From IMG/VR virus record IMGVR_UViG_3300042308_001511, positions 1 to 64,000 of that record: a stretch of 64,000 nt of DNA, one strand, 5' to 3'. The translations under genes and the position numbers were made by a program. The notes under the pieces were generated by a model. That model was not told the DNA's origin and did no database searches. It saw only the letters and a program-made list of their open reading frames with translations. Positions within the stretch are counted from its first letter, which is position 1; the number at the start of each line of letters is the position of its first letter. This document shows, in pieces, positions 17,689 through 60,316 of this stretch.

Positions 17689-17689
17689 T

Positions 17690-37246: not shown

Positions 37247-37801
37247 CTATCTTTTTTTAACTATAAATATTCGGTTACCCTTATCTTCAACTAAATATCC
37301 GTCTATTGGATTCCTATCAAGGAATCTTTTATATAATTTCGTTCTCTTTGTCAATCCGGACTCACCATACTTAGATAATCCTTCGAGACGAAGCATACGT
37401 GTCTCTGGTCGATTCGATAAAAAATTTGTTGTTATATCACCTAAAACCGTTGCAACAACTTTGTATATGTTTGTAGGAACAATCTTTTCAATACTCCAAA
37501 ATCTATCGTTCCATTTGTTTATTTTAGCACTACGGTTGTTCAACAGTACGAATGAACCATCAGTATCAACGGTAACTTCTGATTCATCAACTTCAACTAG
37601 GTATATCACCTCCCAACTATCACCAACTCTTTTAGAAAATTCGGGACCAATTGTATCGTTTTTGAAAACGACCAGGAACTTATTTCCAAAGTCATCTACA
37701 AACTCATACTTTACGTTCGTATCTTTTTCATCAACGACTAAAGAGTCGTAGTGTAAATCTAAATCTTCGTTCATAGAATAAAAACTTTTTAGGTATTGCA
37801 T
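37247..37801 (-). CDS. Hypothetical protein with CTS-like N-terminus
   Basis: MQYLKSFYSMNED; TAATATATA at 37806-37814. Confidence 0.65.
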   Translation of the reverse strand: MQYLKSFYSMNEDLDLHYDSLVVDEKDTNVKYEFVDDFGNKFLVVFKNDTIGPEFSKRVGDSWEVIYLVEVDESEVTVDTDGSFVLLNNRSAKINKWNDRFWSIEKIVPTNIYKVVATVLGDITTNFLSNRPETRMLRLEGLSKYGESGLTKRTKLYKRFLDRNPIDGYLVEDKGNRIFIVKKR

Positions 37802-37844
37802 AAACTATATATTATGGTATCGATTCGGTTTTATATATAAAACT

Positions 37845-38570
37845 ATGAAATACAATGTAGTATCATTAGATCAATCACTTATATCAACCGCATTAGTAGT
37901 CGAAGGACCTTCTGGTATAAGAATGATAAATTATTGCCGTGAATCCGCAGCTGCCGGTAAAAAAGGTATGAAAAAATGGTTTAAACTAGCGGAACAACAC
38001 GTCGAATATCGTTTCATCGAATATAGAGAATATGCTAATTATTCGGAAGGTGAAATTATAAAACTGAAAGATTACGACCGAATAACAGATATGATAATCG
38101 ATGACATATTGGCAACGATTGACATAAATATACCTACAAAAGTGGGTATTGAAGGATACTCCTATGCGAGTTCGGCAGGTGATATAATTGACCTTGTTAC
38201 ATTTTCTACCTTACTTAGGAAAAAACTTTTTGACCGTGTATCAGAAGATATAACTGTTTTATCACCAGCAACACTAAAACTCGAAACGTGTAAACTCACA
38301 TACGATCCAATAGTAACCGAAACTGGTAAGAAAGTGAAAAAGTTAAAATACGAATGGAGAAACAATATGGGTATTGCCGGAGGAAGTTTTACAAAAACGG
38401 ATATGTTGATGGCCATAATTGATAACAAATCAATGCAAGGTGGTTGGGCAGAACATTGTCGTCAGGTAAAAGATGATTTACTTTCGGTATCCACAATTCC
38501 TAAACCATACGAGGATATAAATGATGCCTTTTTAATATACAACGTAATTAAATCAGAAAAGCCAGTTTAG
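37845..38570 (+). CDS. RuvC-like (RNase H fold) Holliday-junction resolvase
   Basis: VVSLDQSLISTAL, VGIEGYSY and EDINDAF give the D/E/D acidic triad. Confidence 0.7.
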   Translation: MKYNVVSLDQSLISTALVVEGPSGIRMINYCRESAAAGKKGMKKWFKLAEQHVEYRFIEYREYANYSEGEIIKLKDYDRITDMIIDDILATIDINIPTKVGIEGYSYASSAGDIIDLVTFSTLLRKKLFDRVSEDITVLSPATLKLETCKLTYDPIVTETGKKVKKLKYEWRNNMGIAGGSFTKTDMLMAIIDNKSMQGGWAEHCRQVKDDLLSVSTIPKPYEDINDAFLIYNVIKSEKPV

Positions 38571-38587
38571 AACTGGCTTTCTTTTTT
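38558..38587. terminator. Bidirectional terminator
   Basis: aaagccagtt-tag-aactggcttt between convergent genes. Confidence 0.75.
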
Positions 38588-38598
38588 ATATTATAAAA

Positions 38599-40302
38599 TT
38601 ATCTCCTTATTTTGGATTCGTTTATTCTTTTGAGTTCAATGTCCCAAACCCTTTTAGCCTCACCTTTCAAGAATGTATTTTTGAGGTATCCTGCAAGTTC
38701 GTAGTCCTCATCACGAACTGCCCTCTGTATCTCGTCCTGTATCTCTGCGGCAGTCATATCTTTGTATTCTTTATTATTTACCTCTTCCGGTTCTTCTTCA
38801 CCGGAAAGTGTTTGTCTTACAAGTCTATCAATCTCCGACTCAGGCTCTTCATCAGTCTTATATTCACCTTCTGATTCACTACCGAACTTTTGTTCCATCT
38901 CCCAGTTTCTCATCGCCTCTTCGTATTCTCCCCAGATTTTGTTGAATTCTGCGATTATCTTCTCAATCTCGTACTTAGCTTTACTCTCTGAGAACTTTTC
39001 TCTGTTGAGTATGAAACGTATCTTGCCGTTCTCCTCGGTTTTGTCGAACGATGAGAAAATCTCCTTCGTCATTTCGAGAAACTCCTCGTCGGTAAACTTA
39101 CCACCTCTTCCTTTGTCGAGTGCGAGTGAACCAAATATTCTCTCTTTCGCATTAGGAAATGTCGCTGCACCAGCACAATTGTTTACAAAACTAGAAAACA
39201 TTTGGTTAGCAAGAGGACCGTATCTGAACTCTTCTGCTTCATCTCTGTATGAAGAAGTAGCTCTTTTTATCTCTTTCGCCAATTCTGGATCCATTTTAAT
39301 CGCCGCAGATTGTAGAAGTATGTGAACTCCTTTTGTTGCCTCGTGTATCAACATAGGGAAATCTATTCCGTATGCCCTAATGACAATCTTGTTGTAGTCA
39401 GTATTCTCTTTTAGTAGAGACAAATTATTTAGCTTGTTTGAAAGTGATTCCCATTTAACACTTACAGAACCTGCTAATCCCTCTGGTGCATCTTTGAACA
39501 TTGCTTGTTTCCGTCCAATTGGAATGGTCCAGTCAAGTTTGTCTGCCTCGTCGGATATACCACACCACAATTTTAATATTCTCTCACCTTTCTCTTTACC
39601 GAATATCTTTTCGATACCATTCTTAGCGGTTTCCGATAGGCTTATTATGTCCTTGGTCGCCTTTCCAGCACCCTGTGTTATTGTGTTCAAGAGCTTCTTC
39701 TTATCAATCGCCAGTTTAACTTCTTTGTTAGATAATGTCTCAACATTTTCTTCTTCTGATTGTGTCGCTTCTTCTGGTTGTGTCGCTTCTTCTGGTGTCT
39801 CATCATCATCAAAAAAACTGAAGAAATCATCTTCTTCCTGTTCCTGTGATTGTTCCTCATCTGATTGTTCAGACTCTTGTGCGAACTCGTCCTGAGTCTC
39901 TTCCTCTTCTTCATCAGGTACCTCCTCTGCTACTTCCGACTTCTGTCTTAATTCTGGCATCTCAGAGATTACACTCTTTACCAACCTTATGTCAAGTTCT
40001 ACCGGCTTCTGTGATGCCCTCAACACAAAACCGAACTCTTCCATTATGACTTCTTTAGCAAGTTCATTAAGTTGTTTATACCTTTCTTCAACCTCTTTCT
40101 TACTACCCTCGTTCATCATCTCAGAGGATTGTGCCATCAGCGAACGGATGTTGCTAGGTCCTTCTCGGTCGATTCTGACTCCGAGGTTCTTTCTAGCCTC
40201 TTCCTCAGCAGACGACATAAAGTCAGATGGAAGACCTTTCGATTTTTTCAAGTTTGCCTCAACTAAAAACTGGTCGAAATCTTTTAATGTTTTCTTTTTC
40301 AT
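38599..40302 (-). CDS. Acidic protein with CTS-like N-terminus and C-terminal UVR-like motif
   Basis: MKKKTLKDFDQFLVEA; FPMLIHEATKG; IQRAVRDEDYELAGYL. Confidence 0.7.
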   Translation of the reverse strand: MKKKTLKDFDQFLVEANLKKSKGLPSDFMSSAEEEARKNLGVRIDREGPSNIRSLMAQSSEMMNEGSKKEVEERYKQLNELAKEVIMEEFGFVLRASQKPVELDIRLVKSVISEMPELRQKSEVAEEVPDEEEEETQDEFAQESEQSDEEQSQEQEEDDFFSFFDDDETPEEATQPEEATQSEEENVETLSNKEVKLAIDKKKLLNTITQGAGKATKDIISLSETAKNGIEKIFGKEKGERILKLWCGISDEADKLDWTIPIGRKQAMFKDAPEGLAGSVSVKWESLSNKLNNLSLLKENTDYNKIVIRAYGIDFPMLIHEATKGVHILLQSAAIKMDPELAKEIKRATSSYRDEAEEFRYGPLANQMFSSFVNNCAGAATFPNAKERIFGSLALDKGRGGKFTDEEFLEMTKEIFSSFDKTEENGKIRFILNREKFSESKAKYEIEKIIAEFNKIWGEYEEAMRNWEMEQKFGSESEGEYKTDEEPESEIDRLVRQTLSGEEEPEEVNNKEYKDMTAAEIQDEIQRAVRDEDYELAGYLKNTFLKGEAKRVWDIELKRINESKIRR

Positions 40303-40316
40303 TTATATAGTTGTTT

Positions 40317-40502
40317 TTATTCGAAATATGAGTCAATATCATTCTTCTCGGATTTGTCAAGATCAGAATATATTTTTGAAAGTCTTTCAACAACCTCATC
40401 AGAACCTGACATAGGAAGTTTATCTACCGGTTTATTTACAGACTTAGTCTTTGTCACAACCGCAGTTTCGAAGAACCTTACGTATTTGTTCAGGTATTTC
40501 AT
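40317..40502 (-). CDS. Small protein with CTS-like N-terminus
   Basis: MKYLNKYVRFFET; TAATATATA at 40525-40533. Confidence 0.6.
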   Translation of the reverse strand: MKYLNKYVRFFETAVVTKTKSVNKPVDKLPMSGSDEVVERLSKIYSDLDKSEKNDIDSYFE

Positions 40503-40588
40503 ATCTTAGTGTTTTTTTGTAGGTTATATATTAAAATGGTTTTGTGCTATTTAACATTTTATATATAGAGAAAATACAACGATATAAA

Positions 40589-41185
40589 ATGAAGAAATTC
40601 TCAGAAATCAAAAAGATAAAGAGGTTCAACGAAGCGGATGACGCTAATGATTTGAAGAACCTTTCAATCGAGGAGCTTAGAAAGCTTGCTGAAAAAGAGG
40701 GGCTTATAAAAAATGATGAAAACGAATCTAACGAAGATGAGAATTCACTTACTAAGCAACTTGTGGAACAACCGGTCGAAAATGAAAAGAATGAAGACAA
40801 TACATCAAGTAATCCTTCTAAATTCTTTTCTAAACTTTTCGAAAGTCGTGAGATGGCACATATTTACCACTTACAGGTTAATGGTGAGATGGGATCTCAT
40901 GCAAAACATACGGCACTTGGTGATTATTATGAAGGTGTTTTAGGTTTTATTGATGATATCATAGAAATATGGCAAGGTCAATATGGTATTATTGAAGAAT
41001 ATGATACTATCGATACTACAGAAACAAAAACTAAAGATACTATTGAATACTTTAATGAATTGGCAAGATTTATTAAGGAAGAAAGAAAATGTATTCCTGC
41101 GGAAGACACACATCTACATAATATTGTTGACGAAGTAGTTGCACTCGTATACAAAACATTGTATAAATTGAAATACAACAAATAA
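40589..41185 (+). CDS. Ferritin/Dps-like four-helix-bundle protein (DUF5856-like)
   Basis: AHIYHLQ...AKHTALGDYYE...DDIIE...LHNIVDEV...TLYKL; start moved to ATG 40589. Confidence 0.7.
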   Translation: MKKFSEIKKIKRFNEADDANDLKNLSIEELRKLAEKEGLIKNDENESNEDENSLTKQLVEQPVENEKNEDNTSSNPSKFFSKLFESREMAHIYHLQVNGEMGSHAKHTALGDYYEGVLGFIDDIIEIWQGQYGIIEEYDTIDTTETKTKDTIEYFNELARFIKEERKCIPAEDTHLHNIVDEVVALVYKTLYKLKYNK

Positions 41186-41212
41186 AAAAAGCCGACACTT
41201 AGTCGGCTTTTT
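41184..41212. terminator. Bidirectional terminator
   Basis: aaaaaaagccgac-actta-gtcggcttttt. Confidence 0.8.
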
Positions 41213-41456
41213 TGTTTATGTCTATTGTTCCGTAGAAGTTATTGTTGACCTGTGTTATGGCATACCTACTCTTCACTGAAGTTTTCGGGGAAAAGAAGTT
41301 GTCTTCTTTAGATGGGAAACCCCATAGTTCACTCATCAAAGACATCCTCCTTTGTGCGACCCAGTTGCCCAATTTGATGTTTTCTGCCATAACATATCGT
41401 GCCCATACGTATCCAGCTTCTAAACCTCCAGACTTTTTACCTACGACTTCACTCAT
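41199..41456 (-). CDS. Small protein resembling the C-terminus of the T4 gp23-type major capsid protein
   Basis: EAGYVWARYV...FSPKTSVKSRYA...FY versus gp23 DAGxxYxPYV...FQPxxGFKTRYG. Confidence 0.55.
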   Translation of the reverse strand: MSEVVGKKSGGLEAGYVWARYVMAENIKLGNWVAQRRMSLMSELWGFPSKEDNFFSPKTSVKSRYAITQVNNNFYGTIDINKKAD

Positions 41457-41496
41457 TTTAAAAATAATTCAATTAATTATTATGTGAATTTTTTAA

Positions 41497-41814
41497 CTAT
41501 TTGTTTTCGTCGAATAGATATTGTCTTCCATCATCAGAGTAAGATTGTAGACTTGTAACTGCGTTGTCAACTTTGTCTATTGCTTCGTCGATTGACCTTT
41601 TGACAATTCGAAGAGCATTTATTGTTGAATCTATTTGGTCCTCTTCTTTACCATCTGGTATTTGATATTCAACTAATTCGTTTATTAGTGAGTCTGTAGT
41701 GGTTTGTCTGTCCTTCAGTTGTGCTACGAAGTCTCCTAATTGATCTAATATTTCTCCTACCCTGTCATCGTCCATTCTTTTGACTTCTGACTCGTTGAAT
41801 CTCTTTATCCTCAT
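41497..41814 (-). CDS. Coiled-coil protein with CTS-like N-terminus
   Basis: MRIKRFNES followed by a helical hairpin. Confidence 0.65.
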   Translation of the reverse strand: MRIKRFNESEVKRMDDDRVGEILDQLGDFVAQLKDRQTTTDSLINELVEYQIPDGKEEDQIDSTINALRIVKRSIDEAIDKVDNAVTSLQSYSDDGRQYLFDENK

Positions 41815-41847
41815 AAAGTGTGTATAAAATTTTAATATATATAAAAT

Positions 41848-42528
41848 ATGAAAAGAGGTAACAAACTAATTCTCGAATTCACCGAATTCAATCTTCAGCG
41901 TTTCAATGACACTTCGGCACAACCTGCAGCACACGTAGATGATCCGAGTCTTTCTACAAACGCCTTTGATAAACATCAAGACGCAATACGTGCTGCAATG
42001 TCAAGATTAGACGATATTATGCACAGACTTGGTGGAACGAGTGTATATAAGAATCTTAGGAGTAAACTTGCATTGGAAAAACAGGACGTCAAAAATCTTG
42101 TAATACAAAGAATAGTTAAGATAAATAGTATATCTTACAACGCTTATATAAGTTTTGTAGTAGATGGTGAACAATACTGGGGAGTAGTTGAGAATATAAC
42201 CGGAACCGATCCAGTTATGAAGTCAGAAGTCTTCAAAGATCAAAGTCTTTATCAAGCAACAGAATGGGTTATAAAGATTAAGGGTATCATTATAAAAGCC
42301 ATAAAAGATTGGTTGAAGCCTGAACCAGGAATGTACAAATTGTTAGAAGATGATATATACTGTTACTCTGTCGAAACTGGGAAACAATTAGAAATGAAAT
42401 CTGGTATAGAAATCGAACTAATTAGATCACACGCAAACTATATTCTTGTAGAATATAGTGGTGATAAATATGAACTAAAAGGTGATAACTATATCTACTT
42501 TAATTGGTGGTTCGAAAAAATTGACTAA
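41848..42528 (+). CDS. Hypothetical protein with CTS-like N-terminus
   Basis: LILEFTEFNLQRFND; TAATATATA at 41833-41841. Confidence 0.7.
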   Translation: MKRGNKLILEFTEFNLQRFNDTSAQPAAHVDDPSLSTNAFDKHQDAIRAAMSRLDDIMHRLGGTSVYKNLRSKLALEKQDVKNLVIQRIVKINSISYNAYISFVVDGEQYWGVVENITGTDPVMKSEVFKDQSLYQATEWVIKIKGIIIKAIKDWLKPEPGMYKLLEDDIYCYSVETGKQLEMKSGIEIELIRSHANYILVEYSGDKYELKGDNYIYFNWWFEKID

Positions 42529-44051
42529 AATTTGAATCTGAATAACGCACTAATTGCACCAATTGTATATAACGCTGCTATTTGATTAGATTCATATACT
42601 CTTAACTTCTTCTGTGCCCAATAACCATCGGGTGAAGAAAGCATAACATCGTAACTAATAAACCTACCCGTCATTATATCATTACCAAATGGATCATATA
42701 TTGCAGAAAGTGGTCCATAATCATAGTCGTATATGAAGAAAAATATGTCACTACCAATTATGTTTTGTCTCATTACGTCTAATTTCAACTCTTTCTTTTC
42801 AACTACCAATTTATCAATTGATCTCAACAAAGAATTGTCTGCAATTGTAGATGATGTAAAACCGTAGAAGAAAGGATATACTCCAGTTATTGATGCAGTT
42901 GCTGTATTCGATTCGAGACCATCACTGGCGGTTATCCTAAATACGGTTGTGTTCTGTTCTATCGGAACTATTGCAATTCCTTTAGCAAGTCCTGTTACAG
43001 TTCTCGATGTACCCTTAATTGGTGGTATTTGGTTTGGATTCATATTCGACAACGCCGTTGGATATGTATCGTTTGACCGTTTGGTTATTTCGTACCTAAT
43101 ACTTATGTTTGGAGTGGAACCTATTTCTGGATACTCCATAGTCGGATCAACTAATCTAAGTGAACAAGTAGGTGGAAGATACCCATATACCATTCTTTCT
43201 AAAATATCAAAGATTGATCTATTACTGAAATTTTCTCCTAAGTTTATGTCACCTATATCTACAGGACAATATCTTGAATCTGAGAAGTCAAGTGAGTATC
43301 CGTTCAAATATGTCTCTAAACCATAAATCGGAACGACAGTGTTGGTCGCACCATAATATTTTGGATCTGTTGGTGTTAAACCCACTAAGGAAACTATTCC
43401 TGATGTATAAGTTAGTGCTCTAACTTCTGTTGTGTTTGTTTGATTTAGGTCCTGTATGTTTGAATATGTTATACCATTTATCGTCACATATCCACCCGGA
43501 TCGTTAGCACCTGGTCCTTTAGATAGAACGTTTATGTCACCCTGTGGATTTATAATTGATAAATCTAACCACCTATTACCTGCATTATTCGAAATCTGAC
43601 TTGCCTCTACCGATGGTTGTAATGAAACTATTGCAGATTGTGTACCTGTAAGAAAGGACATAACGGTTTTGTATTGTGTCCTAGATATATCACTTTTTGT
43701 GTTGTAAATTGTTATATCATTTGCAGATAAAATAGATGTATTAACTACTTCTTCTCCTAGATAGTGTCTTTTACCAAAATAAATTGGCATCTTCAGGTTC
43801 TGGTTAGTATTACCAATACCTATAAAATATTTATTACCAACTAAGTTTTCTTTGAAAGGTACACTATCATATAATGAAAGTATAGCATTTCTCAATTTTT
43901 CTGGATATATTAGTTTAGATGTATTATCCGGAATATCTGTAAAAACAGCGTCTTCTGTGAAATGATATGACTGAGTTGCAGGATTTGACAACTGCAGTGT
44001 GCTACCCACCGTTACCCATGCCGTTCCGCTATAGTTACTATACGTTGCCAT
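42525..44051 (-). CDS. Putative virion protein, paralogue of the upstream gene
   Basis: Start moved to ATG 44051 (TGATG coupling); shares PDNTSKLIxP and DPxG motifs with 44051..45688. Confidence 0.7.
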   Translation of the reverse strand: MATYSNYSGTAWVTVGSTLQLSNPATQSYHFTEDAVFTDIPDNTSKLIYPEKLRNAILSLYDSVPFKENLVGNKYFIGIGNTNQNLKMPIYFGKRHYLGEEVVNTSILSANDITIYNTKSDISRTQYKTVMSFLTGTQSAIVSLQPSVEASQISNNAGNRWLDLSIINPQGDINVLSKGPGANDPGGYVTINGITYSNIQDLNQTNTTEVRALTYTSGIVSLVGLTPTDPKYYGATNTVVPIYGLETYLNGYSLDFSDSRYCPVDIGDINLGENFSNRSIFDILERMVYGYLPPTCSLRLVDPTMEYPEIGSTPNISIRYEITKRSNDTYPTALSNMNPNQIPPIKGTSRTVTGLAKGIAIVPIEQNTTVFRITASDGLESNTATASITGVYPFFYGFTSSTIADNSLLRSIDKLVVEKKELKLDVMRQNIIGSDIFFFIYDYDYGPLSAIYDPFGNDIMTGRFISYDVMLSSPDGYWAQKKLRVYESNQIAALYTIGAISALFRFKF

Positions 44052-45688
44052 CAGAATTTTATTACAAAGTTGTTCGGCTCTGATATAGAGCAAGTAAGAC
44101 CACTAACCCATACTTTCCATTGTGACGTCTGTCCGTTTACGGTCTTTCCACTATTTATAGTAAGACCTCCATTTCGTGTGGTTGCACTAAAGAATGAGTT
44201 TGTTAAATCGGATGAATTGTGAAGTATGAACCCATTAGGATCATACATCTTAGAAATTGGTGTTGTAAATGTATTCTTTTCATATATCACATAAAAGTAT
44301 CCACTACCAGAATAGTTATTGAGTGATACACTACCACTTACACCCGGATATGGTGATATTTGTTTTTTTAAACTTTTTACTATGTTATTGAATGACGTAG
44401 TTATCGTTGTATTGTTTGTAGTGTTTATTGTTCCTTGTGTCATTCCGTAGTATATTGGCCATATGTGATTAATAGGTGCGGTTGAACTATATGAGAATCC
44501 AGTAGGATATGCGTTCCATGTGTTTCCGGGCATATCAGTTGCATTGAAAGAGTATAAAGATTGTGTTGGTGATGATACAGATCCTGCAACAAGTGATGCG
44601 ATTCCTGAAAAAGATGCACCAGGTATACCTGAGAATGAAAGTCCACGGTAAGTTGAGAGTGTCTCTGTGTTTCCAGTTTTTGAAGTTATTATATAATCGT
44701 TTAAATAATCATATTGATCTCTTGCATAAAGTGTCAAATCCCAGTTGAAGTTTATGTTTGTAGTAGTTCCAATCTCTACAAAAGGAATTCCACTCAAAAC
44801 ACTACTTGCAGTAACACTTATTGATGGTGGAACTTTCGGGTATAGTATCTTACGTATAACTTCACTTAGTGGCCATTTGCCACCATTAAAGGATGTCGCT
44901 GAAAAAGAGAATCCTGCAGGAACTCCACCTACTGCAATAGGAGTCATTGTTGGATTCACAAACTCTAATTCATATCCGTTTAGACTAACAGTTCCACCAT
45001 ATATGTTTGTAACTTTACCAGCATCACCGAGTTGTGATATTGTAACGTTGGAAGAGTCCCACTTTAGATATCCATTAGGGTAGTTACCTACATATCTTAA
45101 TATTTTTCCATCTGTTGCACCAGCGTTATCACTTACCTTAGGAAATCTTATCCCATTCAATGCCACATATCCAGTATTACTATAAAGGTTTATACTTCCA
45201 CCACCCAACTGAGGATTTCTTACATTGAAATCTATGTTACCCGTAGATGTGTTGTATTCGGAACCAATGTATGGTGCTGTTGAAAAAAGTGAACTATATG
45301 TTCCTGCAAGGAATCCAATATTAGTAGAGTTCTGTGATGCTGAATCCGAACGTGTATTGTATACGAATATATCAACGTTTTCGTCATTTAGAAGTGAACC
45401 AGACATTATGTCCAGTGAACCATAACTTCTTTTACCAAGAACTATCTTTTGTTTTATGTCTCTGTTTCCGGGGTTACCAGAATCTATACCTATGTATTCT
45501 ACACCGGCTATAGTTCTCGTCTGTTTTATCGGAGAGGACGCCCAAGTTGTAAGTACCGCGTCTCTGACGTCACGTGGGCTTATTAACTTGCTGGTGTTGT
45601 CTGGGAGTTCCTTCAATATAGTAGTTATATCATCTTTGACCGATGACTCGAATTGAGTACCCATATTCACGCTGTAGGTTGCAGGCAT
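44051..45688 (-). CDS. Putative virion protein
   Basis: 545 aa, S/T/G-rich; TAATATATA at 45709-45717. Confidence 0.7.
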   Translation of the reverse strand: MPATYSVNMGTQFESSVKDDITTILKELPDNTSKLISPRDVRDAVLTTWASSPIKQTRTIAGVEYIGIDSGNPGNRDIKQKIVLGKRSYGSLDIMSGSLLNDENVDIFVYNTRSDSASQNSTNIGFLAGTYSSLFSTAPYIGSEYNTSTGNIDFNVRNPQLGGGSINLYSNTGYVALNGIRFPKVSDNAGATDGKILRYVGNYPNGYLKWDSSNVTISQLGDAGKVTNIYGGTVSLNGYELEFVNPTMTPIAVGGVPAGFSFSATSFNGGKWPLSEVIRKILYPKVPPSISVTASSVLSGIPFVEIGTTTNINFNWDLTLYARDQYDYLNDYIITSKTGNTETLSTYRGLSFSGIPGASFSGIASLVAGSVSSPTQSLYSFNATDMPGNTWNAYPTGFSYSSTAPINHIWPIYYGMTQGTINTTNNTTITTSFNNIVKSLKKQISPYPGVSGSVSLNNYSGSGYFYVIYEKNTFTTPISKMYDPNGFILHNSSDLTNSFFSATTRNGGLTINSGKTVNGQTSQWKVWVSGLTCSISEPNNFVIKF

Positions 45689-45716
45689 CTGAATCTATGT
45701 TTTTTCGTTATATATT

Positions 45717-45753
45717 AAAAAAGAAGTGCCCGGTGATGAACCGGGCACTTCTT
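45717..45753 (-). terminator. Intrinsic terminator
   Basis: aagaagtgcccgg-tgatgaa-ccgggcacttctt with an A-tract on the left. Confidence 0.8.
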
Positions 45754-45764
45754 ATTAGTTTTTA

Positions 45765-46166
45765 TTAGTCAAAAAGAAACTCAATTTTTATTAGATCCTT
45801 TATTTTAGCAGTTTTTAACTCAAGCTCTTCAAACTTTACCTTATCAAAAGGTATCTCATTCTCTATATTCATAAGAGAGTTCATCTCTTCTGAGAATGAT
45901 TGTGGATTTATTATATTTACTGCACCTGGAATTACATTACCCGATTCGTCTAACGCTTGTGATGGATTACCTTCTTCATCTTTCTGTGTCCACTTATCAA
46001 GTATTTTTCGTTCCATTTTAATCTTATCCTCCACTATTGAGTTTAATTCTTTTATAATTCTGGTTAATTTGAACGCAGTTACTGCGTTTATGTCCATTTC
46101 TATAAGTTGGTTAAGTGCAGAAATCGTCTCTTCAGTTAATTGTGAATTTTTGACTACTAATGACAT
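45765..46166 (-). CDS. Hypothetical helical protein (tail-assembly-chaperone/DUF1617-like)
   Basis: ALNQLIEMDINAVTAFKLTRIIKEL pattern. Confidence 0.5.
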   Translation of the reverse strand: MSLVVKNSQLTEETISALNQLIEMDINAVTAFKLTRIIKELNSIVEDKIKMERKILDKWTQKDEEGNPSQALDESGNVIPGAVNIINPQSFSEEMNSLMNIENEIPFDKVKFEELELKTAKIKDLIKIEFLFD

Positions 46167-47765: not shown

Positions 47766-48563
47766 CTATTTGACAAACATTCTAGGCATACCTTTCTCAC
47801 CCTCAGGTATGATTGCTAGAAACTCTTCCTCATCGTGTCCTCTCTGAAGACCAAATTCAACCGTATCATACATTACATTCACTGGACGATCATCGTCGTT
47901 CAGGAGTCTCCTTGCACGTGCCAGTTGTGTATCCGATGACTCTTTTGTGTAAGTCTTCACAACGAAGTAGTCGGTACCCAACTTTTTGTTGAATTTAGAC
48001 AACTCTTCCTCAACCCTAACCTTCAAATCCTTTATGTAGTCTTTGTCGAACGAGTAATCGAGTGAGAAGAACTTCAACCTTCCTTGTTGTATCAACACCG
48101 AACCGAATACCGGTTTGAGTTCTTTTTGTAAAACAGGATCTAAGTTTATCTCCTTTATAGGTCTAAAACGGTATGCTACACCAAGTCTTTTGAGTTCGTC
48201 TATATGTTTGTACTCGACGAAAGAATGTGCCCATACACCTCCGGTGAACATTGTTTGACCAGTACGTATAGCGTTCTTATTGAGGAAGTCTTCTGCTTCT
48301 TTTCTACCGGTCTCCATCTCGGTCGGTTTCCTGTAAAGTCTATATGGTTTGAGACTACCGTCACCTTCTTCTTTGTGAACAAAATAGTCGTCCTCTGAAA
48401 CCTCGTCGTATTTGTAGTCTGTTATGGACTTCCTGAGGTATTCCATCGCGTCTTCTTCACTAGCGAACCAACGACCGACAATGTATCTATTATCAAAAGG
48501 TGTCAGATCCATTTCGTCATACGTAAGTTTCTCAAAAAGTGTGTAGTTCAATAAGTGCTTCAT
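47766..48563 (-). CDS. Hypothetical protein with CTS-like N-terminus
   Basis: MKHLLNYTLFEK; TAATATATA at 48569-48577. Confidence 0.7.
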   Translation of the reverse strand: MKHLLNYTLFEKLTYDEMDLTPFDNRYIVGRWFASEEDAMEYLRKSITDYKYDEVSEDDYFVHKEEGDGSLKPYRLYRKPTEMETGRKEAEDFLNKNAIRTGQTMFTGGVWAHSFVEYKHIDELKRLGVAYRFRPIKEINLDPVLQKELKPVFGSVLIQQGRLKFFSLDYSFDKDYIKDLKVRVEEELSKFNKKLGTDYFVVKTYTKESSDTQLARARRLLNDDDRPVNVMYDTVEFGLQRGHDEEEFLAIIPEGEKGMPRMFVK

Positions 48564-48577
48564 ACCGTTATATATTA

Positions 48578-50869: not shown

Positions 50870-51517
50870 TTATTCGACGTTCTGTGGAACATCCACTTGT
50901 GCGTCTTTGAAACGGTACGTTATGTCAGTACGCTTTCTCCTGTTTTCCGGATCGTACTCAAAGACCTTTATATGTGGATACTTTTTCAAGTATTCCGAAA
51001 TTTTACTCTCTATCTCTAAAGCACGGTTTCTATTTGAATTTGACCGCTCTAGGTTTATTGACATTATATACCTACCGAGGTTTGGTATGTCCTGAAAGAT
51101 ACGTTCCTCGAACTCTGTCTCCAACACTGGATCAGTTGGTAGGTCAAGTCCGTGTTTTGTTCCTCTTTTCCCTGATTTCACTTCGTCGAAGTTGGACTTC
51201 GAGAAATTCCTGGTTTTATCCTGCTTAATGGCTGAACCAAGCTCGTCCGCTGGATAAGGTCTTATACCAGCACGCATAAGCTTGTCTGCATCCAACTCGA
51301 TAATCTCTGATATACCAGCACCGTCGTGTGAGAAGTCTATGTTCCTCGTAACTGATATGGACTTATTCTTTCCGTGTGTTACTCTGGTTGGCTTACCACA
51401 CCTCAAAAGGTCGCTATCCAGTATGGCAACGAACCTGGTGGTCAGGTGGTATAGAGGCTGTCTTGATCCTTCGAGATAAGACTCCTCGATAAACTCTACG
51501 AATGTTTGTATTTTCAT
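50870..51517 (-). CDS. Putative ADP-ribosyltransferase-fold virion protein with CTS
   Basis: MKIQTFVEFIEE; LYHLT, ISVTRN, EFEERI triad; TAATATATA at 51522-51530. Confidence 0.55.
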   Translation of the reverse strand: MKIQTFVEFIEESYLEGSRQPLYHLTTRFVAILDSDLLRCGKPTRVTHGKNKSISVTRNIDFSHDGAGISEIIELDADKLMRAGIRPYPADELGSAIKQDKTRNFSKSNFDEVKSGKRGTKHGLDLPTDPVLETEFEERIFQDIPNLGRYIMSINLERSNSNRNRALEIESKISEYLKKYPHIKVFEYDPENRRKRTDITYRFKDAQVDVPQNVE

Positions 51518-51540
51518 AAAATATATATTATATTTACTAA

Positions 51541-51770: not shown

Positions 51771-51805
51771 CTTATTTATGTTATGTCCCTCAACCTACAC
51801 AGGTT

Positions 51806-54352: not shown

Positions 54353-54372
54353 ACTCTAATTTTTTTGTTGTT

Positions 54373-54381
54373 TATATATTA
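54373..54381 (-). promoter_or_regulatory. TAATATATA motif upstream of nrdA
   Basis: Exact motif about 20 nt upstream of the start. Confidence 0.55.
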
Positions 54382-54442
54382 GGCCGTTTTTTGGATTAAA
54401 ATATATTCAGTTGAAAATTTGTGATTTTTTACAGTTCTATGT

Positions 54443-55348: not shown

Positions 55349-55393
55349 AGAATTTTTATATTTTTTATTATATTTGTTATTTTTGATTTGGTT

Positions 55394-56725: not shown

Positions 56726-56805
56726 AAATTAAATGTCTTTATAAGATATTATATGACACCGATACTCTTGGTTTGCAACCAAAAGTCTATTTTTAGTACC
56801 GATAT

Positions 56806-57702
56806 TTATTGTTCCTTTATAAGGTCGTGACCATCACCGTCAATATCACCAACTTTTTTTATAAGTGGTACCTCTATATCTTCGACTTCTTTTTTTAGTC
56901 TTTCTCTATCCTTATTAGAAATTTTGAGTACATCTTTTAGTTTGTTCATAAAGAAACCGATACCGTGTTTGGCCATCAATGCGGTTATACCGGCGGAGAA
57001 CATAGCCAGATTCATAAGGAATGTTTCTAAGTCCATATTGTAAATACCGATAATTGCATTTATACCATTCATTACCGGGACTAACATAGCCGTATATGAA
57101 ATCATATCTATGAATCCGGTCCTTAGTGCTGCATTTCCACGCATAAAAAATTCTAATGTATCCATCAGACCTATCTTTTTGATTCCCTTTATGAGTATAA
57201 AGAAAATCTTTTTAGTTGCCTTTAAACACTCTACGACTTTTGACAAAACCGAACTATCTGATCCGTTTTTACTTCCGGTATTTGCGTTAGGGAATCCGGC
57301 GAGTTGTAGTTCAGAAAGTATTAACTTAACTTCAGCAAGCATCTGTTTTCTGTGTCCATCTTCGTTACTTTTAGAGTGTTTCTTTTCTTCGAGAACTATT
57401 AAGTAAACAGCTGCTATTGTTAGAAGTACAACCGTACGTGTATCCATTGCTGGTGCGGTCTTCGATATTAGATTATCTACTATAGGATAAAGTGCACCAA
57501 TTCCTGCACCAAAAGTTCCTATAAGGTTGAAATTAAGTTTAATATCTCCTTTTACTCCGGATTTGAACTTATCAATCTCCTCAGTTTGTATCTTTTTATA
57601 TTCTTCTTTGTTAACCGACTCATTTATAGCGGTGTCCATATTTTTGAAGAAGTCCAGAGCCATTTCTCGACCCAGGTTGTATTCGTCGAATTTTCCAATC
57701 AT
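56806..57702 (-). CDS. Membrane-associated protein with CTS-like N-terminus
   Basis: MIGKFDEY...INES; several hydrophobic helices; TAATATATA at 57707-57715. Confidence 0.65.
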   Translation of the reverse strand: MIGKFDEYNLGREMALDFFKNMDTAINESVNKEEYKKIQTEEIDKFKSGVKGDIKLNFNLIGTFGAGIGALYPIVDNLISKTAPAMDTRTVVLLTIAAVYLIVLEEKKHSKSNEDGHRKQMLAEVKLILSELQLAGFPNANTGSKNGSDSSVLSKVVECLKATKKIFFILIKGIKKIGLMDTLEFFMRGNAALRTGFIDMISYTAMLVPVMNGINAIIGIYNMDLETFLMNLAMFSAGITALMAKHGIGFFMNKLKDVLKISNKDRERLKKEVEDIEVPLIKKVGDIDGDGHDLIKEQ

Positions 57703-57777
57703 ACTTTATATATTATTGTAAGAATTTCGCTTTTTGGTATTAGAAAAGAAATATATACTAAAAAATAAATCTAAAAG

Positions 57778-58323
57778 ATGAAATTAAAAAACATAAAGGC
57801 TTTCGAAGAATTTTTCTACTTTGATCAAGAAGAAGAAAGAGCTTCAAACGAAAGACCAGAAACGGATAGTTGTCCGGATTGTGGAGACGACGTTGCAACA
57901 TGTGATTGTGTAGATTACGATGACGAATTGAGAGATTACGTAAAACCATCAAATCGTGAAGAGGAAATCTATGGTGACGATGATGATTATGATAAAAATT
58001 TCGAGTTAGCACCAGTAGGTGAAGAAGACTCTGAGTATGATGAGGAAGAAGAAGAGGAAGAAGACGATACTAATAAACCATGGGGTGATGAAGGTATCAG
58101 ACTCGAAAGATTCTCAACATTCAACGAAAAGAAGAAAGCTCCTAAGAAGGATGACGAAAAAACTCCTAAAAAACCAGACTTCAAAGACTTCGACAAAGAC
58201 GGAGACACAGAAGAGCCTATGACTAAAGCACTCAAAGACAAAGGTAGTAAGAAGTTTGAAAAACCTAAGAAAGGTGAAATTCCTGCGGCACTAGCAGCAT
58301 ACCAGAAAAAGAAAAAGAAATAA
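57778..58323 (+). CDS. Low-complexity acidic/basic internal-protein-like ORF
   Basis: MKLKNIKAFEEF; CPDC...CDC; EF-hand-like DFDKDGDTEEPM. Confidence 0.7.
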   Translation: MKLKNIKAFEEFFYFDQEEERASNERPETDSCPDCGDDVATCDCVDYDDELRDYVKPSNREEEIYGDDDDYDKNFELAPVGEEDSEYDEEEEEEEDDTNKPWGDEGIRLERFSTFNEKKKAPKKDDEKTPKKPDFKDFDKDGDTEEPMTKALKDKGSKKFEKPKKGEIPAALAAYQKKKKK

Positions 58324-58325
58324 AT

Positions 58326-58354
58326 AAAAGCCCACTCGATTGAGTGGGCTTTTT
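58326..58354. terminator. Bidirectional terminator
   Basis: aaaagcccactc-gatt-gagtgggctttt. Confidence 0.85.
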
Positions 58355-58356
58355 AT

Positions 58357-60024
58357 TTATGCCTCAAATTTCACGTTGATCTTTTTTATCGCTAGCTGGA
58401 ACCATTCCGGAAGAAAGTGCGAACTATGTCTCATAACATCACCAAATCCACCATCTATTATTATCGTGTCTGCGTAATCTATATCAGACCTTACGGCACG
58501 ACCAGTCATTTGTATCAATCCACAGACGGTTTTCCATGAGTACCAGTCAGAGTTTGTGTGTTGTCGCATCTTATTTTTTTGTGACGCAAGTGATGGATAT
58601 GGTACTTTGGCAATCACCTGAAAACGTGCTTTGTCGTTGTCGAAACTAACACCAGTATCCATAGATGGTGAAACTATCACCGTTGCATCCTCTGTCTCAC
58701 AATGTTCTCTTAGAACTTCATCTTTGTTGCTAGAGTCGTGGAATCTAAGTCTTTTGTCTTTAACCGACTTCTGAATCCATCCGGATAGTTCGAAAGAGTT
58801 TGTATGTATTATTCCTTTTTTATTTTTGTACTTATCGAGAAGTTTGCTTATATAAGGAATGTAATTTTTGAATGTCTCATCTTTACTTTTGTAAGACATC
58901 TTTCCTAAGGGCATATAATAGATTGGTCTATTTCTTAATGGGAAAGGAGATTCTATGGAGTAGAATGCTGCCAAATCTGCATCAAGTCCGTTGAGTTGAC
59001 AAAATAAGTTTTTATCAAGTATAGTTCCGGACATAAGAAAAACCATATCATAGTTACTAAAAACATATTTGTCTAAATAATCACTTGCCCATATAGGTTC
59101 AAGTGAAAGTTCTTTCTGACGTGTTTTTTCGTTCCAGTTACTTTCGAGTACCCAGTTGTCTGGATTCTCTTTGTATTCTTTCAAAAATACATCTATTTTA
59201 ACTTGTAACTGTTTTAAGTCTGTAATAAGGTTCATCAGTTTTACATCAGAGTTCTTTTTACCGAGTACTTTGTCTATCTTTAGGTCCCTTTTGTCAGTTT
59301 TTTCACTTCTTCCTGCAGTGACTAAACCTTTCTCCATACCTTCTAATGAGTCTAATATATCACCATTCAACTCCTTTAGAAATTCTACATAAGTTGATAT
59401 ACTTGAAACTGACTTCAACTTCTTCATAAGTCCGTATTCGTTACCCAATTTATATCTCTTTAGTGTTGTTTCTGTTATCTTTATTGATATAAAGTTAGAC
59501 ATTACATCATCAAATTCGTGTGCTTCGTCAACTATAAGAACCCTAGACCCTCTACTTTCTAATAATTTGGGACTATATATGGCGTAGAGTATGTATAGGT
59601 AAAAGTTTGTCAGAGATACTGTTCCTGACATATAACCTTCTCTTGCACTAGCGTATGGACATTCCTCACACCTTGTTTTGTTCAATCGGTTGAACTCGGC
59701 ACCCTGTGCACATGAACACGAATAAGCTTCACACTCATAGTTCTCCTTTCCCTTCAAATCACATATGGATGTATATGTCTCAGAGTATTGATCCTGTAGT
59801 ATCTTACTATTTGTTATCACATCTACCCTCGCCATACGAGAAACATTCTTTCGGTACCAGTCTGCAATCATAAGTGCTAGGTGGCTTTTGCCCACTCCGA
59901 CGGGGAGGTTCAAAAGGAAGAATTTAGTGGTTGGATTTTTCTTCCATTGTGAGTCAACAAACTCGAGAGCTTCTCTTTGAGCTTTTCTCGGTTTATATAT
60001 CCCTAGGTCTTTTTTGAGTGACAT
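58357..60024 (-). CDS. DinG/XPD-family SF2 helicase
   Basis: Q motif (PRKAQ), PVGVGKS, Fe-S Cys cluster, DEAH, MSGT, KVPYP, QMTGRAVRS. Confidence 0.9.
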   Translation of the reverse strand: MSLKKDLGIYKPRKAQREALEFVDSQWKKNPTTKFFLLNLPVGVGKSHLALMIADWYRKNVSRMARVDVITNSKILQDQYSETYTSICDLKGKENYECEAYSCSCAQGAEFNRLNKTRCEECPYASAREGYMSGTVSLTNFYLYILYAIYSPKLLESRGSRVLIVDEAHEFDDVMSNFISIKITETTLKRYKLGNEYGLMKKLKSVSSISTYVEFLKELNGDILDSLEGMEKGLVTAGRSEKTDKRDLKIDKVLGKKNSDVKLMNLITDLKQLQVKIDVFLKEYKENPDNWVLESNWNEKTRQKELSLEPIWASDYLDKYVFSNYDMVFLMSGTILDKNLFCQLNGLDADLAAFYSIESPFPLRNRPIYYMPLGKMSYKSKDETFKNYIPYISKLLDKYKNKKGIIHTNSFELSGWIQKSVKDKRLRFHDSSNKDEVLREHCETEDATVIVSPSMDTGVSFDNDKARFQVIAKVPYPSLASQKNKMRQHTNSDWYSWKTVCGLIQMTGRAVRSDIDYADTIIIDGGFGDVMRHSSHFLPEWFQLAIKKINVKFEA

Positions 60025-60136
60025 TTCGTTTTTTTTGTGTTTTTTATAAAAAATTATACAGTATTTTCGAAAAATAGTTTAGGAAAAGAGGTTTTTTACA
60101 TTTTTGACATAATATATACAGAAAAATATAAAAATT

Positions 60137-60316
60137 ATGCACATCCTTGACTATGATGAGTTCAACATCTACACAAGCGAGGCAGATGTTGTTAGCTACG
60201 TTGAGCAACTGATCGAGGAGGGCATAGAGCTGAAGGAAGATGCTTATGACAAATGTCTAGTTCACTTCGGCGAAAACCTCCGGAGTTTGATTGACTCTAT
60301 CTTCGTCGCTGAGTAA
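60137..60316 (+). CDS. Small unannotated 59-aa protein with CTS-like N-terminus
   Basis: MHILDYDEFNIYTSEADVVSYVEQLIEEG...IFVAE*; TAATATATA at 60110-60118 upstream and a terminator downstream. Confidence 0.7.
   Translation: MHILDYDEFNIYTSEADVVSYVEQLIEEGIELKEDAYDKCLVHFGENLRSLIDSIFVAE

What the first reader, a model, noticed from the sequence alone, without database searches (positions are those of the whole stretch)
37247..60316. About 11 proteins share a T4-like capsid-targeting N-terminus, most behind the TAATATATA promoter
Seen: MQYLKSFYSMNE, MKKKTLKDFDQFLVE, MKYLNKYVRFFE, MKKFSEIKKIKRFNE, MRIKRFNE, MKRGNKLILEFTEF, MKHLLNYTLFE, MKIQTFVEFIEE, MIGKFDEY, MKLKNIKAFEEF (with an internal RLERFSTFNE) and MHILDYDEF. 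Established: T4 internal proteins carry a ~10-aa capsid-targeting sequence (MKTYQEFIAE-type) that the prohead protease cleaves after Glu. Inference: a large set of head-packaged, injected proteins, including ferritin-like, ART-like, UVR-bearing and membrane proteins.
Basis: partly seen in the sequence, partly recalled or inferred. Interest (0 to 1): 0.72.

Follow-up and report, generated by a model that had tools for sequence, protein, structure and literature searches.

The report
Shared N-terminal address tag, huge phage
About one in ten proteins of this freshwater huge phage and its 634-kb relative start with the same roughly 10-residue tag, which most likely loads them into the phage head as in phage T4 and is then cut off, so these phages may inject dozens of different proteins into their host.

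Summary
All 11 N-termini are at the stated coordinates.

**How common the tag is**
- The core motif is M-K/R-x-I/L-K/R-x-F/Y, followed by an acidic "φ-x-E" end.
- It opens 39-63 of the 457 genes I called on this 344-kb record. None of 1,947 internal Met-started segments match it.
- It opens 104-121 of 898 genes in the 634-kb relative LR745206.1.

**What kind of signal it is**
- Conserved positions use synonymous codons freely, so selection acts on the peptide.
- The tagged proteins are otherwise unrelated.
- The tag is followed by variable linkers and is present or absent among homologues.

**Link to TAATATATA**
- TAATATATA also precedes tail genes here, and portal and protease genes in the relative.
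- Tagged genes are strongly linked to it, mostly with the motif ending only 4-6 nt before the ATG.

**Link to T4-type head assembly**
- The clade has T4-type head genes. These include a gp21-family protease fused to scaffold-like repeats that carry (L/I)-A-E sites.
- None of these head genes lies on this record, which is probably only half of a genome of about 660 kb.

**Verdict**
The best reading is a T4-type capsid-targeting propeptide, with confidence about 0.55. Packaging and cleavage are not shown. The main rivals are a tag read by the phage's own Clp/DnaK machinery and a constraint linked to gene expression.

The parts
37247..37801 (-). Tagged ORFan, 184 aa, N-terminus MQYLKSFYSMNE (canonical register)
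   Evidence: PSSM 8.9. TAATATATA at 37806-37814 ends 4 nt before the ATG. No Pfam or PHROG hit.
38599..40302 (-). Tagged acidic protein, 567 aa, N-terminus MKKKTLKDFDQFLVE followed by A (long, T4-like variant)
   Evidence: The LR745206.1 orthologue starts MKNFKDFMNEE. UVR motif only at E = 0.0099, below the cut-off. No exact TAATATATA upstream.
40317..40502 (-). Tagged small protein, 61 aa, N-terminus MKYLNKYVRFFE (best canonical match in the window)
   Evidence: PSSM 15.2. TAATATATA at 40525-40533, 22 nt upstream of the ATG.
40589..41185 (+). Tagged DUF5856 / Dps-like protein, 198 aa, N-terminus MKKFSEIKKIKRFNE, then an acidic linker; the domain starts near residue 100
   Evidence: Pfam DUF5856 at 5e-17 over residues 103-194; phrog_858 at 2e-20. 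The orthologue in LR745206.1 starts MKKFSDFGGKKPVKRINEAD.
41497..41814 (-). Tagged protein, 105 aa, N-terminus MRIKRFNES (short variant)
   Evidence: The orthologue in LR745206.1 starts MKIKRLYEND, PSSM 6.4.
41848..42528 (+). Tagged protein, 226 aa, N-terminus MKRGNKLILEFTEFNLQRFND (long variant with a second RFN-D/E element)
   Evidence: TAATATATA at 41833-41841, 6 nt upstream. The first 20 residues are almost identical in the 62%-identical orthologue of LR745206.1.
47766..48563 (-). Tagged ORFan, 265 aa, N-terminus MKHLLNYTLFE (canonical)
   Evidence: PSSM 10.7. TAATATATA at 48569-48577, 5 nt upstream.
50870..51517 (-). Tagged protein, 215 aa, with a weakly ART-superfamily-like fold; N-terminus MKIQTFVEFIEE followed by S (the most T4-CTS-like)
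   Evidence: In the 31-member family alignment A1, F6 and F9 are >= 90% conserved and E12 is invariant, with S/A after it. AF2 model: the tag is a low-confidence helix at residues 6-12, separate from the domain. Foldseek hits DarT, Tpt1 and Arr. TAATATATA at 51522-51530, 4 nt upstream.
56806..57702 (-). Weakly tagged protein, 298 aa, N-terminus MIGKFDEY, with one strong TM-like segment (residues 85-104)
   Evidence: TAATATATA at 57707-57715, 4 nt upstream. The orthologue in LR745206.1 has MKIQRYQEYENY at an internal Met that is probably the true start.
57778..58323 (+). Tagged, very acidic protein, 181 aa, N-terminus MKLKNIKAFEEF, with an internal RLERFSTFNE
   Evidence: D+E = 32%. Only a one-mismatch AAATATATA lies upstream.
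60137..60316 (+). Doubtful member, 59 aa, N-terminus MHILDYDEF
   Evidence: TAATATATA at 60110-60118, 18 nt upstream. It does not fit the register and my gene caller did not call it.
36836..36844 (-). TAATATATA 23 nt upstream of an untagged 804-aa tail-fibre-like gene. It shows that the same element drives structural genes.
   Evidence: Other copies precede genes matching tail-spike and virion-structural, tape-measure and adaptor PHROGs and RNR.

Best explanation
The shared N-terminus is a modular address tag of the T4 capsid-targeting-sequence (CTS) kind.

**Proposed form.** It is an amphipathic N-terminal helix of about 8-12 residues. Positions 2 and 5 are basic, positions 4, 7 and 10 are hydrophobic or aromatic, and the end is acidic. 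The consensus is M-K/R-Y/H-I/L-K/R-x-F/Y-(N/E)-E.

**Proposed mechanism.**
1. The tagged proteins are made late, from the same TAATATATA promoter as the virion genes.
2. The helix docks them onto the scaffolding core of the assembling prohead.
3. The T4 gp21-family prohead protease of this phage clade then cuts after the Glu of the terminal φ-x-E element.
4. The mature cargo stays in the DNA-filled head and is injected with the genome.

Candidate cargo includes an ART-fold protein, a GNAT acetyltransferase, a kinase/HAD RNA-repair-like enzyme, a Dps-like protein, one membrane-active protein and many ORFans.

**Shown:** the tag exists, it is under peptide-level selection, it is modular, it has two parts, it is linked to the promoter, and the clade has T4-type head genes including the protease.

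**Inferred:** docking to the core, cleavage after Glu, residence in the virion and injection.
For: 1. **Enrichment.** 36-39 strict and up to 63 loose tags among 457 N-termini, against 0 of about 1,900 internal Met segments. In LR745206.1, 104 of 898 N-termini match against 4 of 3,107 internal segments. There are none in 80 T4 genes.
2. **Peptide-level selection.** Leu, Ile, Lys, Arg, Phe, Tyr and Glu codons vary freely at the conserved positions.
3. **Unrelated carriers.** After trimming 16 residues, BLASTP finds only 3 small paralogue groups among 48 tagged proteins. Carriers include GNAT, PNK/HAD, GATase, P-loop and Dps-like domains.
4. **Modularity.** In the GNAT family the tag is conserved, the linker after it varies in length, and 3 of 12 members lack the tag. 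One orthologue pair differs in whether the tag is present. In the AF2 model the tag is a detached, low-confidence helix.
5. **Two-part structure.** Proteins picked on residues 1-7 alone have E at positions 8-12 in 90% of cases (background 30%). They have φ-x-E in 80% (background 19%) and φ-x-E-[S/A/N/G] in 47% (background 4%). All known T4-family and φKZ-family prohead proteases cut after Glu (PMC5694885).
6. **T4-like subclass.** MIKKYLQFIKE|A, MKLKKYKQFIKE|S and M.I.xFxEFIxE|S/A resemble the T4 IPII/IPIII N-terminus MKTYQEFIAE|A, read from the T4 record.
7. **Head genes in the clade.** LR745206.1 has a gp20 portal (3e-57), a head-maturation protease (phrog_207 at 4e-30; S77 weak; the motif NRNERIY against T4 NRNKRLY), a gp23 capsid protein (2e-26) and a gp17 terminase. 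The protease is fused to about 14 repeats of YSEY[L/I]AENLDKNI, which puts an (L/I)-A-E site every 13 residues. The same arrangement is found in all 80 IMG/VR relatives examined.
8. **Co-regulation.** Tagged genes are enriched behind TAATATATA (Fisher p = 3e-9). The same element precedes genes matching tail-spike, tape-measure and adaptor PHROGs here. In the relative it precedes the portal and protease genes.
Against: - No capsid, portal, terminase or gp21-type protease gene is on this 344-kb record. The link to a Glu-specific protease therefore rests on relatives.
- No proteomic or N-terminal data exist for any member.
- The main consensus is not the T4 CTS (T4 IPs score -8 to -14).
- The residue three before the Glu is often F, T or K rather than L or I, and the Glu sits at position 8, 9 or 11.
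- More than 100 different packaged proteins in one phage would be unprecedented.
- Tagged proteins are acidic (median pI 5.1), unlike the basic T4 IPs (their basic character is from my own knowledge).
- The tightest link is to TAATATATA ending only 4-6 nt before the ATG. This hints at a role in expression.
- The phage encodes its own Clp ATPase, two ClpP homologues and DnaK. These could also read N-terminal tags.
Confidence: 0.55

Rival explanations
1. The tag is a recognition signal for the phage's own proteostasis machinery. It could be an N-terminal degron or handle for the phage-encoded Clp/Hsp100 unfoldase with ClpP, or a DnaK-binding element. It would give a whole class of late proteins a controlled lifetime or assisted folding, rather than sending them into the capsid.
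For: - The genome encodes DnaK (82% identical to that of LR745206.1).
- It encodes a 706-aa ATP-dependent protease ATPase (phrog_4871, 8e-231).
- It encodes two ClpP-family proteins (7.5e-54 and 8e-29) and SmpB.
- Two tagged proteins carry DnaJ-type zinc-finger-like motifs.
- The tag is basic and hydrophobic at the extreme N-terminus. From my own knowledge, this is the general flavour of ClpX/ClpA N-motifs and DnaK-binding cores.
Against: - The conserved acidic end (E in 90%) is disfavoured in DnaK-binding motifs (own knowledge).
- This reading gives no reason for the φ-x-E-small element, for the T4-CTS-like subclass, or for sharing a promoter with head genes.
- No test of binding was possible.
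Confidence: 0.12
2. The tag is a docking helix for some other assembly or compartment. It might bind the membrane, oligomerise, or sort proteins to a phage-built intracellular structure. In this reading it is not removed by the head protease.
For: - The tag has an amphipathic helical pattern, with hydrophobic residues at 4, 7 and 10 and charged residues at 2, 5, 8 and 9. AF2 predicts a helix at residues 6-12.
- The number of carriers (about 10-13% of genes) is more typical of a general sorting signal than of a head-cargo set.
- The carriers are very diverse.
Against: - No candidate compartment gene was identified. I did not search specifically for chimallin-type shell genes.
- The Glu-small end and its likeness to gp21-type cleavage sites are left unexplained.
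- Co-expression with head genes fits capsid loading better.
Confidence: 0.15
3. The conserved N-terminus reflects a requirement of expression. Most tagged genes sit 4-6 nt behind TAATATATA and are probably leaderless. In this reading the first ten codons, or the nascent peptide, are constrained for initiation on leaderless mRNAs in a host without Shine-Dalgarno use.
For: - In the 4-7-nt spacing class, 15 of 23 genes in this record and 34 of 67 in LR745206.1 are tagged. Among genes without the motif the figure is 11-12%.
- No Shine-Dalgarno signal lies upstream of starts; the region is A-rich instead.
Against: - Synonymous codons are used at genomic frequencies at the conserved positions. The constraint is therefore on amino acids, not on mRNA sequence.
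- Many tagged genes have a 17-29-nt leader or no exact motif at all (28+17 in this record, 66+24 in the relative).
- Aromatic residues at fixed positions and a Glu-small end have no known role in initiation.
- About a third to half of the close-spaced genes are untagged.
Confidence: 0.08

Closest known systems
Capsid-targeting sequence (CTS) of phage T4 internal proteins IPI-III and Alt, cut by prohead protease gp21
   Same: - N-terminal position and a length of about 10 residues.
- Shared by otherwise unrelated, fast-evolving proteins.
- Skeleton of M1, K2, a hydrophobic or aromatic residue at 4 and F7 (T4 ipI MKTFKEF, ipII/III MKTYQEF).
- Ends in φ-x-E followed by a small residue.
- One subclass here reads Y-x-x-F-I-x-E followed by S/A.
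- The clade has gp20-, gp21-, gp23- and gp17-type head genes.
   Different: - The main consensus (MKYLKxF-N/E-E-S) is distinct, and T4 IPs score poorly on it.
- There are 40-120 carriers per genome, against fewer than ten in T4.
- The carriers are mostly acidic.
- The protease is fused to a repeat scaffold.
- Many tagged genes have the promoter element 4-6 nt from the ATG.
- Packaging and cleavage are untested.
Long N-terminal propeptides of head and ejection proteins in giant phages φKZ, 201φ2-1 and SPN3US, cut at A/S/G-x-E by a gp21-related protease (PMC5694885)
   Same: - Giant phages with many internal head proteins.
- A protease of the same superfamily that cuts after Glu.
- Conserved N-termini among diverged paralogues were noted there too.
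   Different: - Those propeptides are mostly 100-160 residues long and belong to a few paralogue families (8 of about 50 head proteins in SPN3US).
- Here the tag is short, uniform and sits on dozens of unrelated proteins.
Cargo-loading (targeting) peptides of encapsulins, and packaging signals of phage P1 Dar proteins
   Same: A short terminal peptide, or an N-terminal region, that is enough to load diverse cargo into an HK97-fold shell.
   Different: - Encapsulin peptides are usually C-terminal and are not removed.
- No sequence likeness was tested.
- This comparison is from my own knowledge, apart from mentions of a P1 CTS in PMC9024508, which was listed and not read.

Membership tests
T4-type capsid-targeting sequence / gp21-cleaved N-terminal propeptide | Located at the extreme N-terminus and 10-20 residues long | tested here: met
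   The motif starts at Met1 and ends by residue 8-15. It is absent from internal Met-started segments.
T4-type capsid-targeting sequence / gp21-cleaved N-terminal propeptide | Shared by proteins that are otherwise unrelated | tested here: met
   Only 3 small BLASTP groups among 48 tagged proteins after trimming the tag. Their Pfam domains are diverse.
T4-type capsid-targeting sequence / gp21-cleaved N-terminal propeptide | Ends in a gp21-type cleavage site, (L/I)-x-E followed by a small residue | tested here: inconclusive
   φ-x-E is present in 80% and φ-x-E-[S/A/N/G] in 47% of tags, against 19% and 4% background. However, φ is often F or Y, and the Glu position varies between 8, 9 and 11. Cleavage itself was not observed.
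T4-type capsid-targeting sequence / gp21-cleaved N-terminal propeptide | Sequence likeness to the T4 CTS (MKTYQEFIAE) | tested here: inconclusive
   T4 IPs score -8 to -14 on the tag PSSM. One subclass (Y-x-x-F-I-x-E followed by S/A, 17 genes in LR745206.1, plus the 50870 family) matches the T4 pattern closely.
T4-type capsid-targeting sequence / gp21-cleaved N-terminal propeptide | The same genome encodes a gp21-family prohead protease and a scaffolding core | tested here: inconclusive
   Absent from this record, which lacks all head genes and is probably about half a genome. Present in LR745206.1 and in 80 IMG/VR relatives as a protease-scaffold-repeat fusion next to a gp23-type capsid gene.
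T4-type capsid-targeting sequence / gp21-cleaved N-terminal propeptide | Expressed together with head-assembly genes | tested here: met
   Tested at sequence level only. The same TAATATATA element precedes the tagged genes, genes matching tail, tape-measure and adaptor PHROGs here, and the portal and protease genes in LR745206.1. Transcript data were inconclusive.
T4-type capsid-targeting sequence / gp21-cleaved N-terminal propeptide | Sufficient to package a foreign protein, and absent from the mature virion protein | not testable with these tools
   Needs virion proteomics or a reporter-packaging assay. The phage is uncultured.
φKZ/SPN3US-type long head-protein propeptides | Propeptide mostly over 100 residues, cut at A/S/G-x-E | tested here: not met
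   The tags are 8-15 residues long. In the GNAT and 50870 families the domain starts within about 15-30 residues of Met1.
Sec/Tat signal peptide | Hydrophobic core of 10 or more residues after a basic N-region | tested here: not met
   Columns 8-16 are dominated by E, N, K, S and D, and residues 13-40 are enriched in D and E.
ClpX/ClpA N-terminal degron | N-terminal motif that confers Clp-dependent degradation | not testable with these tools
   Only the presence of Clp genes is shown. No binding or degradation test was possible.

The most novel reading that the evidence does not exclude
The largest known phages (the Mahaphage clade, with Bacteroidota hosts) use one short N-terminal label to load an arsenal of 50 to more than 100 different proteins into the capsid for injection with the DNA. 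That would be about a tenth of their coding capacity. The cargo would include enzymes such as ART-fold, GNAT and RNA-repair-like proteins. The label would be coupled to dedicated, probably leaderless, late transcription units, so that new effector genes become injectable simply by acquiring a cassette of promoter plus ten codons.
Probability: 0.4. Interest if true: 0.88.

Novelty: new variant of a known kind. Interest (0 to 1): 0.76.

Why it matters
**If the tag is a capsid-loading signal**
- It gives a sequence-only way to read off the injected proteome of uncultured huge phages. That set would be dozens to over a hundred candidate first-strike effectors per genome, most with no known function.
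- It would help explain what part of these very large genomes is for.
- It would extend the T4 CTS principle to a remote, environmentally widespread clade. The phage is found in many lake and river metagenomes, and IMG/VR holds 223 capsid-gene relatives.
- It would offer a natural, portable packaging tag for phage engineering.

**If the tag turns out to have another function**
A peptide label on about 10% of a virus's proteins, tied to a specific promoter geometry, would still be a new sorting or regulatory system worth identifying.

Tried and rejected
**Chance or composition artefact.** Rejected on three grounds: the internal-Met controls, the T4 control and the codon analysis.

**Paralogue family.** Rejected.

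**Head genes on this record.** Searches for PF03420, PF07068, PF04586, PF05065 and PF03237, and tblastn with the relative's head proteins, all found nothing. Five rounds of PHROG scans of large, promoter-bearing or conserved proteins also found no head genes. They found only tail, baseplate, replication and chaperone genes. Conclusion: the record is incomplete, not that the phage lacks these genes.

**The two ClpP homologues as prohead protease.** The ClpP gene in the window sits among sigma-factor, thioredoxin and SmpB genes, not among head genes, so it was not adopted as the prohead protease. The second ClpP, near baseplate genes, remains open.

**Metatranscriptomes (read laying).** Only scattered low-depth contigs from relatives were found. 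They do not define 5' ends, so leaderless transcription remains an inference.

**Complex prediction of the protease domain with a tagged protein.** I did not pursue it further, so there is no verdict.

**Extending the record.**
- The 660-kb JGI contig that carries 97-98%-identical proteins could not be searched.
- No IMG/VR contig overlapped the record's ends or the head loci.

**Rfam and tRNA scans of the window.** Nothing found.

**Atlas look-ups of two tagged proteins.** Only viral clusters of hypothetical proteins, plus one weak DarT/PARP lead.

Full report
**What the window is.**
- The window is the first 64 kb of a 344,083-bp IMG/VR virus record with 36.6% GC.
- Gene starts are preceded by A-rich sequence and no Shine-Dalgarno signal.
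- Its DnaK is 82%, 78% and 64% identical to those of LR745206.1 (634 kb), LR756502.1 (642 kb) and LR756501.1 (735 kb). These lengths match the largest phage genomes described, of the Mahaphage clade with predicted Bacteroidetes hosts (PMC7162821).
- 184 of my 457 called proteins have a homologue in LR745206.1.
- The phage, or close strains of it, occurs in many lake, river and freshwater metagenomes.

- A crude gene call of the whole record (457 genes) shows the pattern is genome-wide.
- The regex ^M[KR].[ILMV][KRDTN].[FY] matches 36 N-termini and none of 1,861 internal Met-started segments.
- A PSSM built from the tags scores >= 8 for 39 N-termini and for 0 of 1,947 internal segments.
- Looser variants bring the total to about 63.
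- I stitched LR745206.1 together from the public record. There, 79 N-termini match the regex and 104 score PSSM >= 8 among 898 genes, against 4-5 of about 3,000 internal segments.
- The first 50 kb of T4, which has similar GC, has none.
- The consensus is M-K/R-Y/H-L/I-K/R-x-F/Y-(N/E/K)-E.
- Only three of the eleven window proteins fit this strict register. The rest are shorter, longer or T4-like variants, and several of them are supported by conserved orthologues. MHILDYDEF and MIGKFDEY are weak.

**It is a peptide signal, and it is modular.**
- Conserved positions use synonymous codons at about genomic frequencies. For example, position 4 uses ATA, TTA, CTG, TTG, CTT and CTA.
- After removing 16 residues, 48 tagged proteins fall into only three small BLASTP groups.
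- Carriers with recognisable domains include a GNAT, a kinase/HAD protein, a GATase, a P-loop protein, a DUF5856/Dps-like protein, DnaJ-zinc-finger-like proteins and a DUF2793 protein. Most carriers are ORFans.
- In the GNAT family the tag is conserved, and a linker of variable length follows it before the invariant start of the domain. Three of twelve members lack the tag.
- In the family of the 50870 protein, the tag M-x-I-K-x-F-x-E-F-I-x-E followed by S/A is conserved down to 31% identity. E12 is invariant.
- The AlphaFold model (pLDDT 71.7) puts the tag in a short, low-confidence helix (residues 6-12) separated from the first strand.
- The fold gives weak matches to DarT, Tpt1/KptA and Arr, which belong to the ART superfamily.

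**The tag has two parts.**
- I selected proteins on residues 1-7 alone. Of these, 90% have Glu at positions 8-12 (background 30-35%).
- 80% have φ-x-E (background 19-27%), and 47% have φ-x-E-[S/A/N/G] (background 4-7%).
- In LR745206.1 the residue after the Glu is Ser in 35 of 79 tags.
- T4, φKZ, 201φ2-1 and SPN3US prohead proteases all cut after Glu. T4 CTS propeptides are 10-20 residues long (PMC5694885).
- Read from the T4 record, IPII and IPIII start MKTYQEFIAE followed by A, and IPI starts MKTFKEF. This is the same skeleton of M1, K2, φ4 and F7.
- The T4 sequences score poorly on the tag PSSM, so the main class is a distinct sequence.
- One subclass matches the T4 pattern closely. Examples are MIKKYLQFIKE|A, MKLKKYKQFIKE|S and MKIRKYIEFITE|D. 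There are 17 such genes in LR745206.1, plus the 50870 family.

**Head machinery.**
- This record has no T4-type or HK97-type capsid, protease or terminase gene. It also has no tblastn match to the relative's head proteins.
- Proteins 97-98% identical to two of its proteins lie on a 660,742-bp JGI contig. The record is therefore probably about half a genome.
- LR745206.1 carries, within 25 kb, a gp17-type terminase, a gp20-type portal (3e-57), a head-maturation protease and a gp23-type capsid protein (2e-26). The protease matches phrog_207 at 4e-30 and Pfam S77 weakly.
- The protease domain has NRNERIY where T4 gp21 has NRNKRLY.
- The protease is fused to about 14 tandem repeats of YSEY[L/I]AENLDKNI. 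This looks like a scaffold with an (L/I)-A-E site every 13 residues.
- All 80 IMG/VR relatives examined have this fusion directly upstream of the capsid gene, and their flanks hold 53 tagged ORFs.
- The N-terminus of the capsid protein has an invariant HSINENAY, a possible I-N-E|N site.

**Promoter link.**
- TAATATATA occurs 13 times in the window against 1.7 expected.
- It occurs 55 times in the record, against about 11 expected from a first-order Markov model. Of these, 47 lie within 60 nt upstream of a start on the same strand.
- Tagged genes are enriched behind it: 21 of 57 against 26 of 400 (p = 3e-9).
- There are two spacing classes.
  - In one, the motif ends 17-29 nt before the ATG, with an A-rich leader. 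This class holds genes matching tail-spike, tape-measure and adaptor PHROGs, and RNR. In the relative it also holds the portal and protease genes.
  - In the other, the motif ends 4-7 nt before the ATG. In this class 15 of 23 genes (this record) and 34 of 67 (relative) are tagged.
- The close spacing suggests leaderless mRNAs. Metatranscriptome contigs could not settle this.

**Interpretation.**
- The best-supported reading is a T4-type capsid-targeting propeptide that has been expanded to an unprecedented number of cargo proteins.
- The tag, its selection, its modularity, the Glu-small end, the shared promoter and the T4-type protease in the clade are shown.
- Docking, cleavage and injection are inferred.
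- Evidence against this reading:
  - the head genes are missing from this record;
  - the number of carriers is very large;
  - the carriers are acidic (median pI 5.1);
  - the consensus is not the T4 one;
  - the phage has its own Clp/Hsp100, ClpP and DnaK;
  - the tag is tied to the close-spaced promoter class.
- I found no paper that links a CTS to huge phages.

Noticed in passing
window 37806-37814, 48569-48577, 51522-51530, 57707-57715 (close class); 36836-36844, 45709-45717, 54373-54381 (leader class): TAATATATA falls into two sharp spacing classes: it ends either 4-7 nt or 17-29 nt before the ATG. The close class would give leaderless or nearly leaderless mRNAs and is mostly tagged genes. 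The far class has an A-rich leader and holds structural genes and RNR. LR745206.1 shows the same two classes (41 genes at exactly 4 nt).
   Followed up: partly
whole record G000 (344,083 bp): The record has no capsid, portal, terminase or head-protease gene, although CheckV estimates it as 91% complete. Proteins 97-98% identical to two of its proteins lie on a 660,742-bp JGI contig, so the true genome is probably about twice as long.
   Followed up: partly
L030:6546-8666 (LR745206.1 198546-200669); same gene in L048-L127: The head-maturation protease is fused to about 14 tandem 13-residue repeats, YSEY[L/I]AENLDKNI, followed by an acidic tail. This looks like a built-in scaffold that carries a protease site in every repeat.
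   Followed up: partly
window 14784-20361 (+ strand): The window holds a host-like cluster. By eye it contains a sigma-70/ECF-like factor (14784-15395), thioredoxin (17368-17688), SmpB (18226-18666) and S-adenosylhomocysteine hydrolase (19048-20361). It also has a ClpP-family protein (15462-16028), identified by Pfam. Elsewhere the record has DnaK, a Clp/Hsp100 ATPase, a second ClpP and a 534-aa protein matching an uncharacterised PHROG (phrog_12136) at 8e-187. No tmRNA was found in the window.
   Followed up: partly
window 48608-50050 (-): This gene encodes a TROVE (Ro60-like) domain protein, according to the Pfam annotation of the near-identical JGI contig. Neither Rfam nor ARAGORN finds a Y-RNA, tRNA or tmRNA anywhere in the window.
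   Followed up: partly
window 23296-31425 (-): A 2,709-aa gene behind TAATATATA has 46% GC in a 36% GC genome. It lies in a block of very large genes that are probably tail or fibre genes (1,692, 1,052, 965 and 804 aa).
   Followed up: no
L022:18966-19130 (T4 gene 61.1): The T4 hypothetical protein gp61.1 starts MKTFKEFIKE. This is very like the T4 IP capsid-targeting sequence.
   Followed up: no
G000 127767-129575, 132671-134443, 189534-191453, 175667-177259: The record has several large homing-endonuclease/HNH genes (phrog_3339 and phrog_559 at 1e-115 or better, phrog_1314).
   Followed up: no
L030:8752-10431 and L048-L127 (capsid gene): In the gp23-type capsid protein, the N-terminal segment HSINENAY is invariant across 54 distinct sequences. 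A variable linker follows it, then GSGDVGQN, which corresponds to T4 GGDHGYN just after the gp23 cleavage site. INE|N may be the maturation site.
   Followed up: partly
window 42525-45688 (-): Two adjacent paralogous genes of about 510-545 aa share an N-terminal motif (TSKLI.P...R.A.L). The second gene sits behind TAATATATA. They are probably structural (fibre-like) proteins. PHROGs gave only a weak hit.
   Followed up: no
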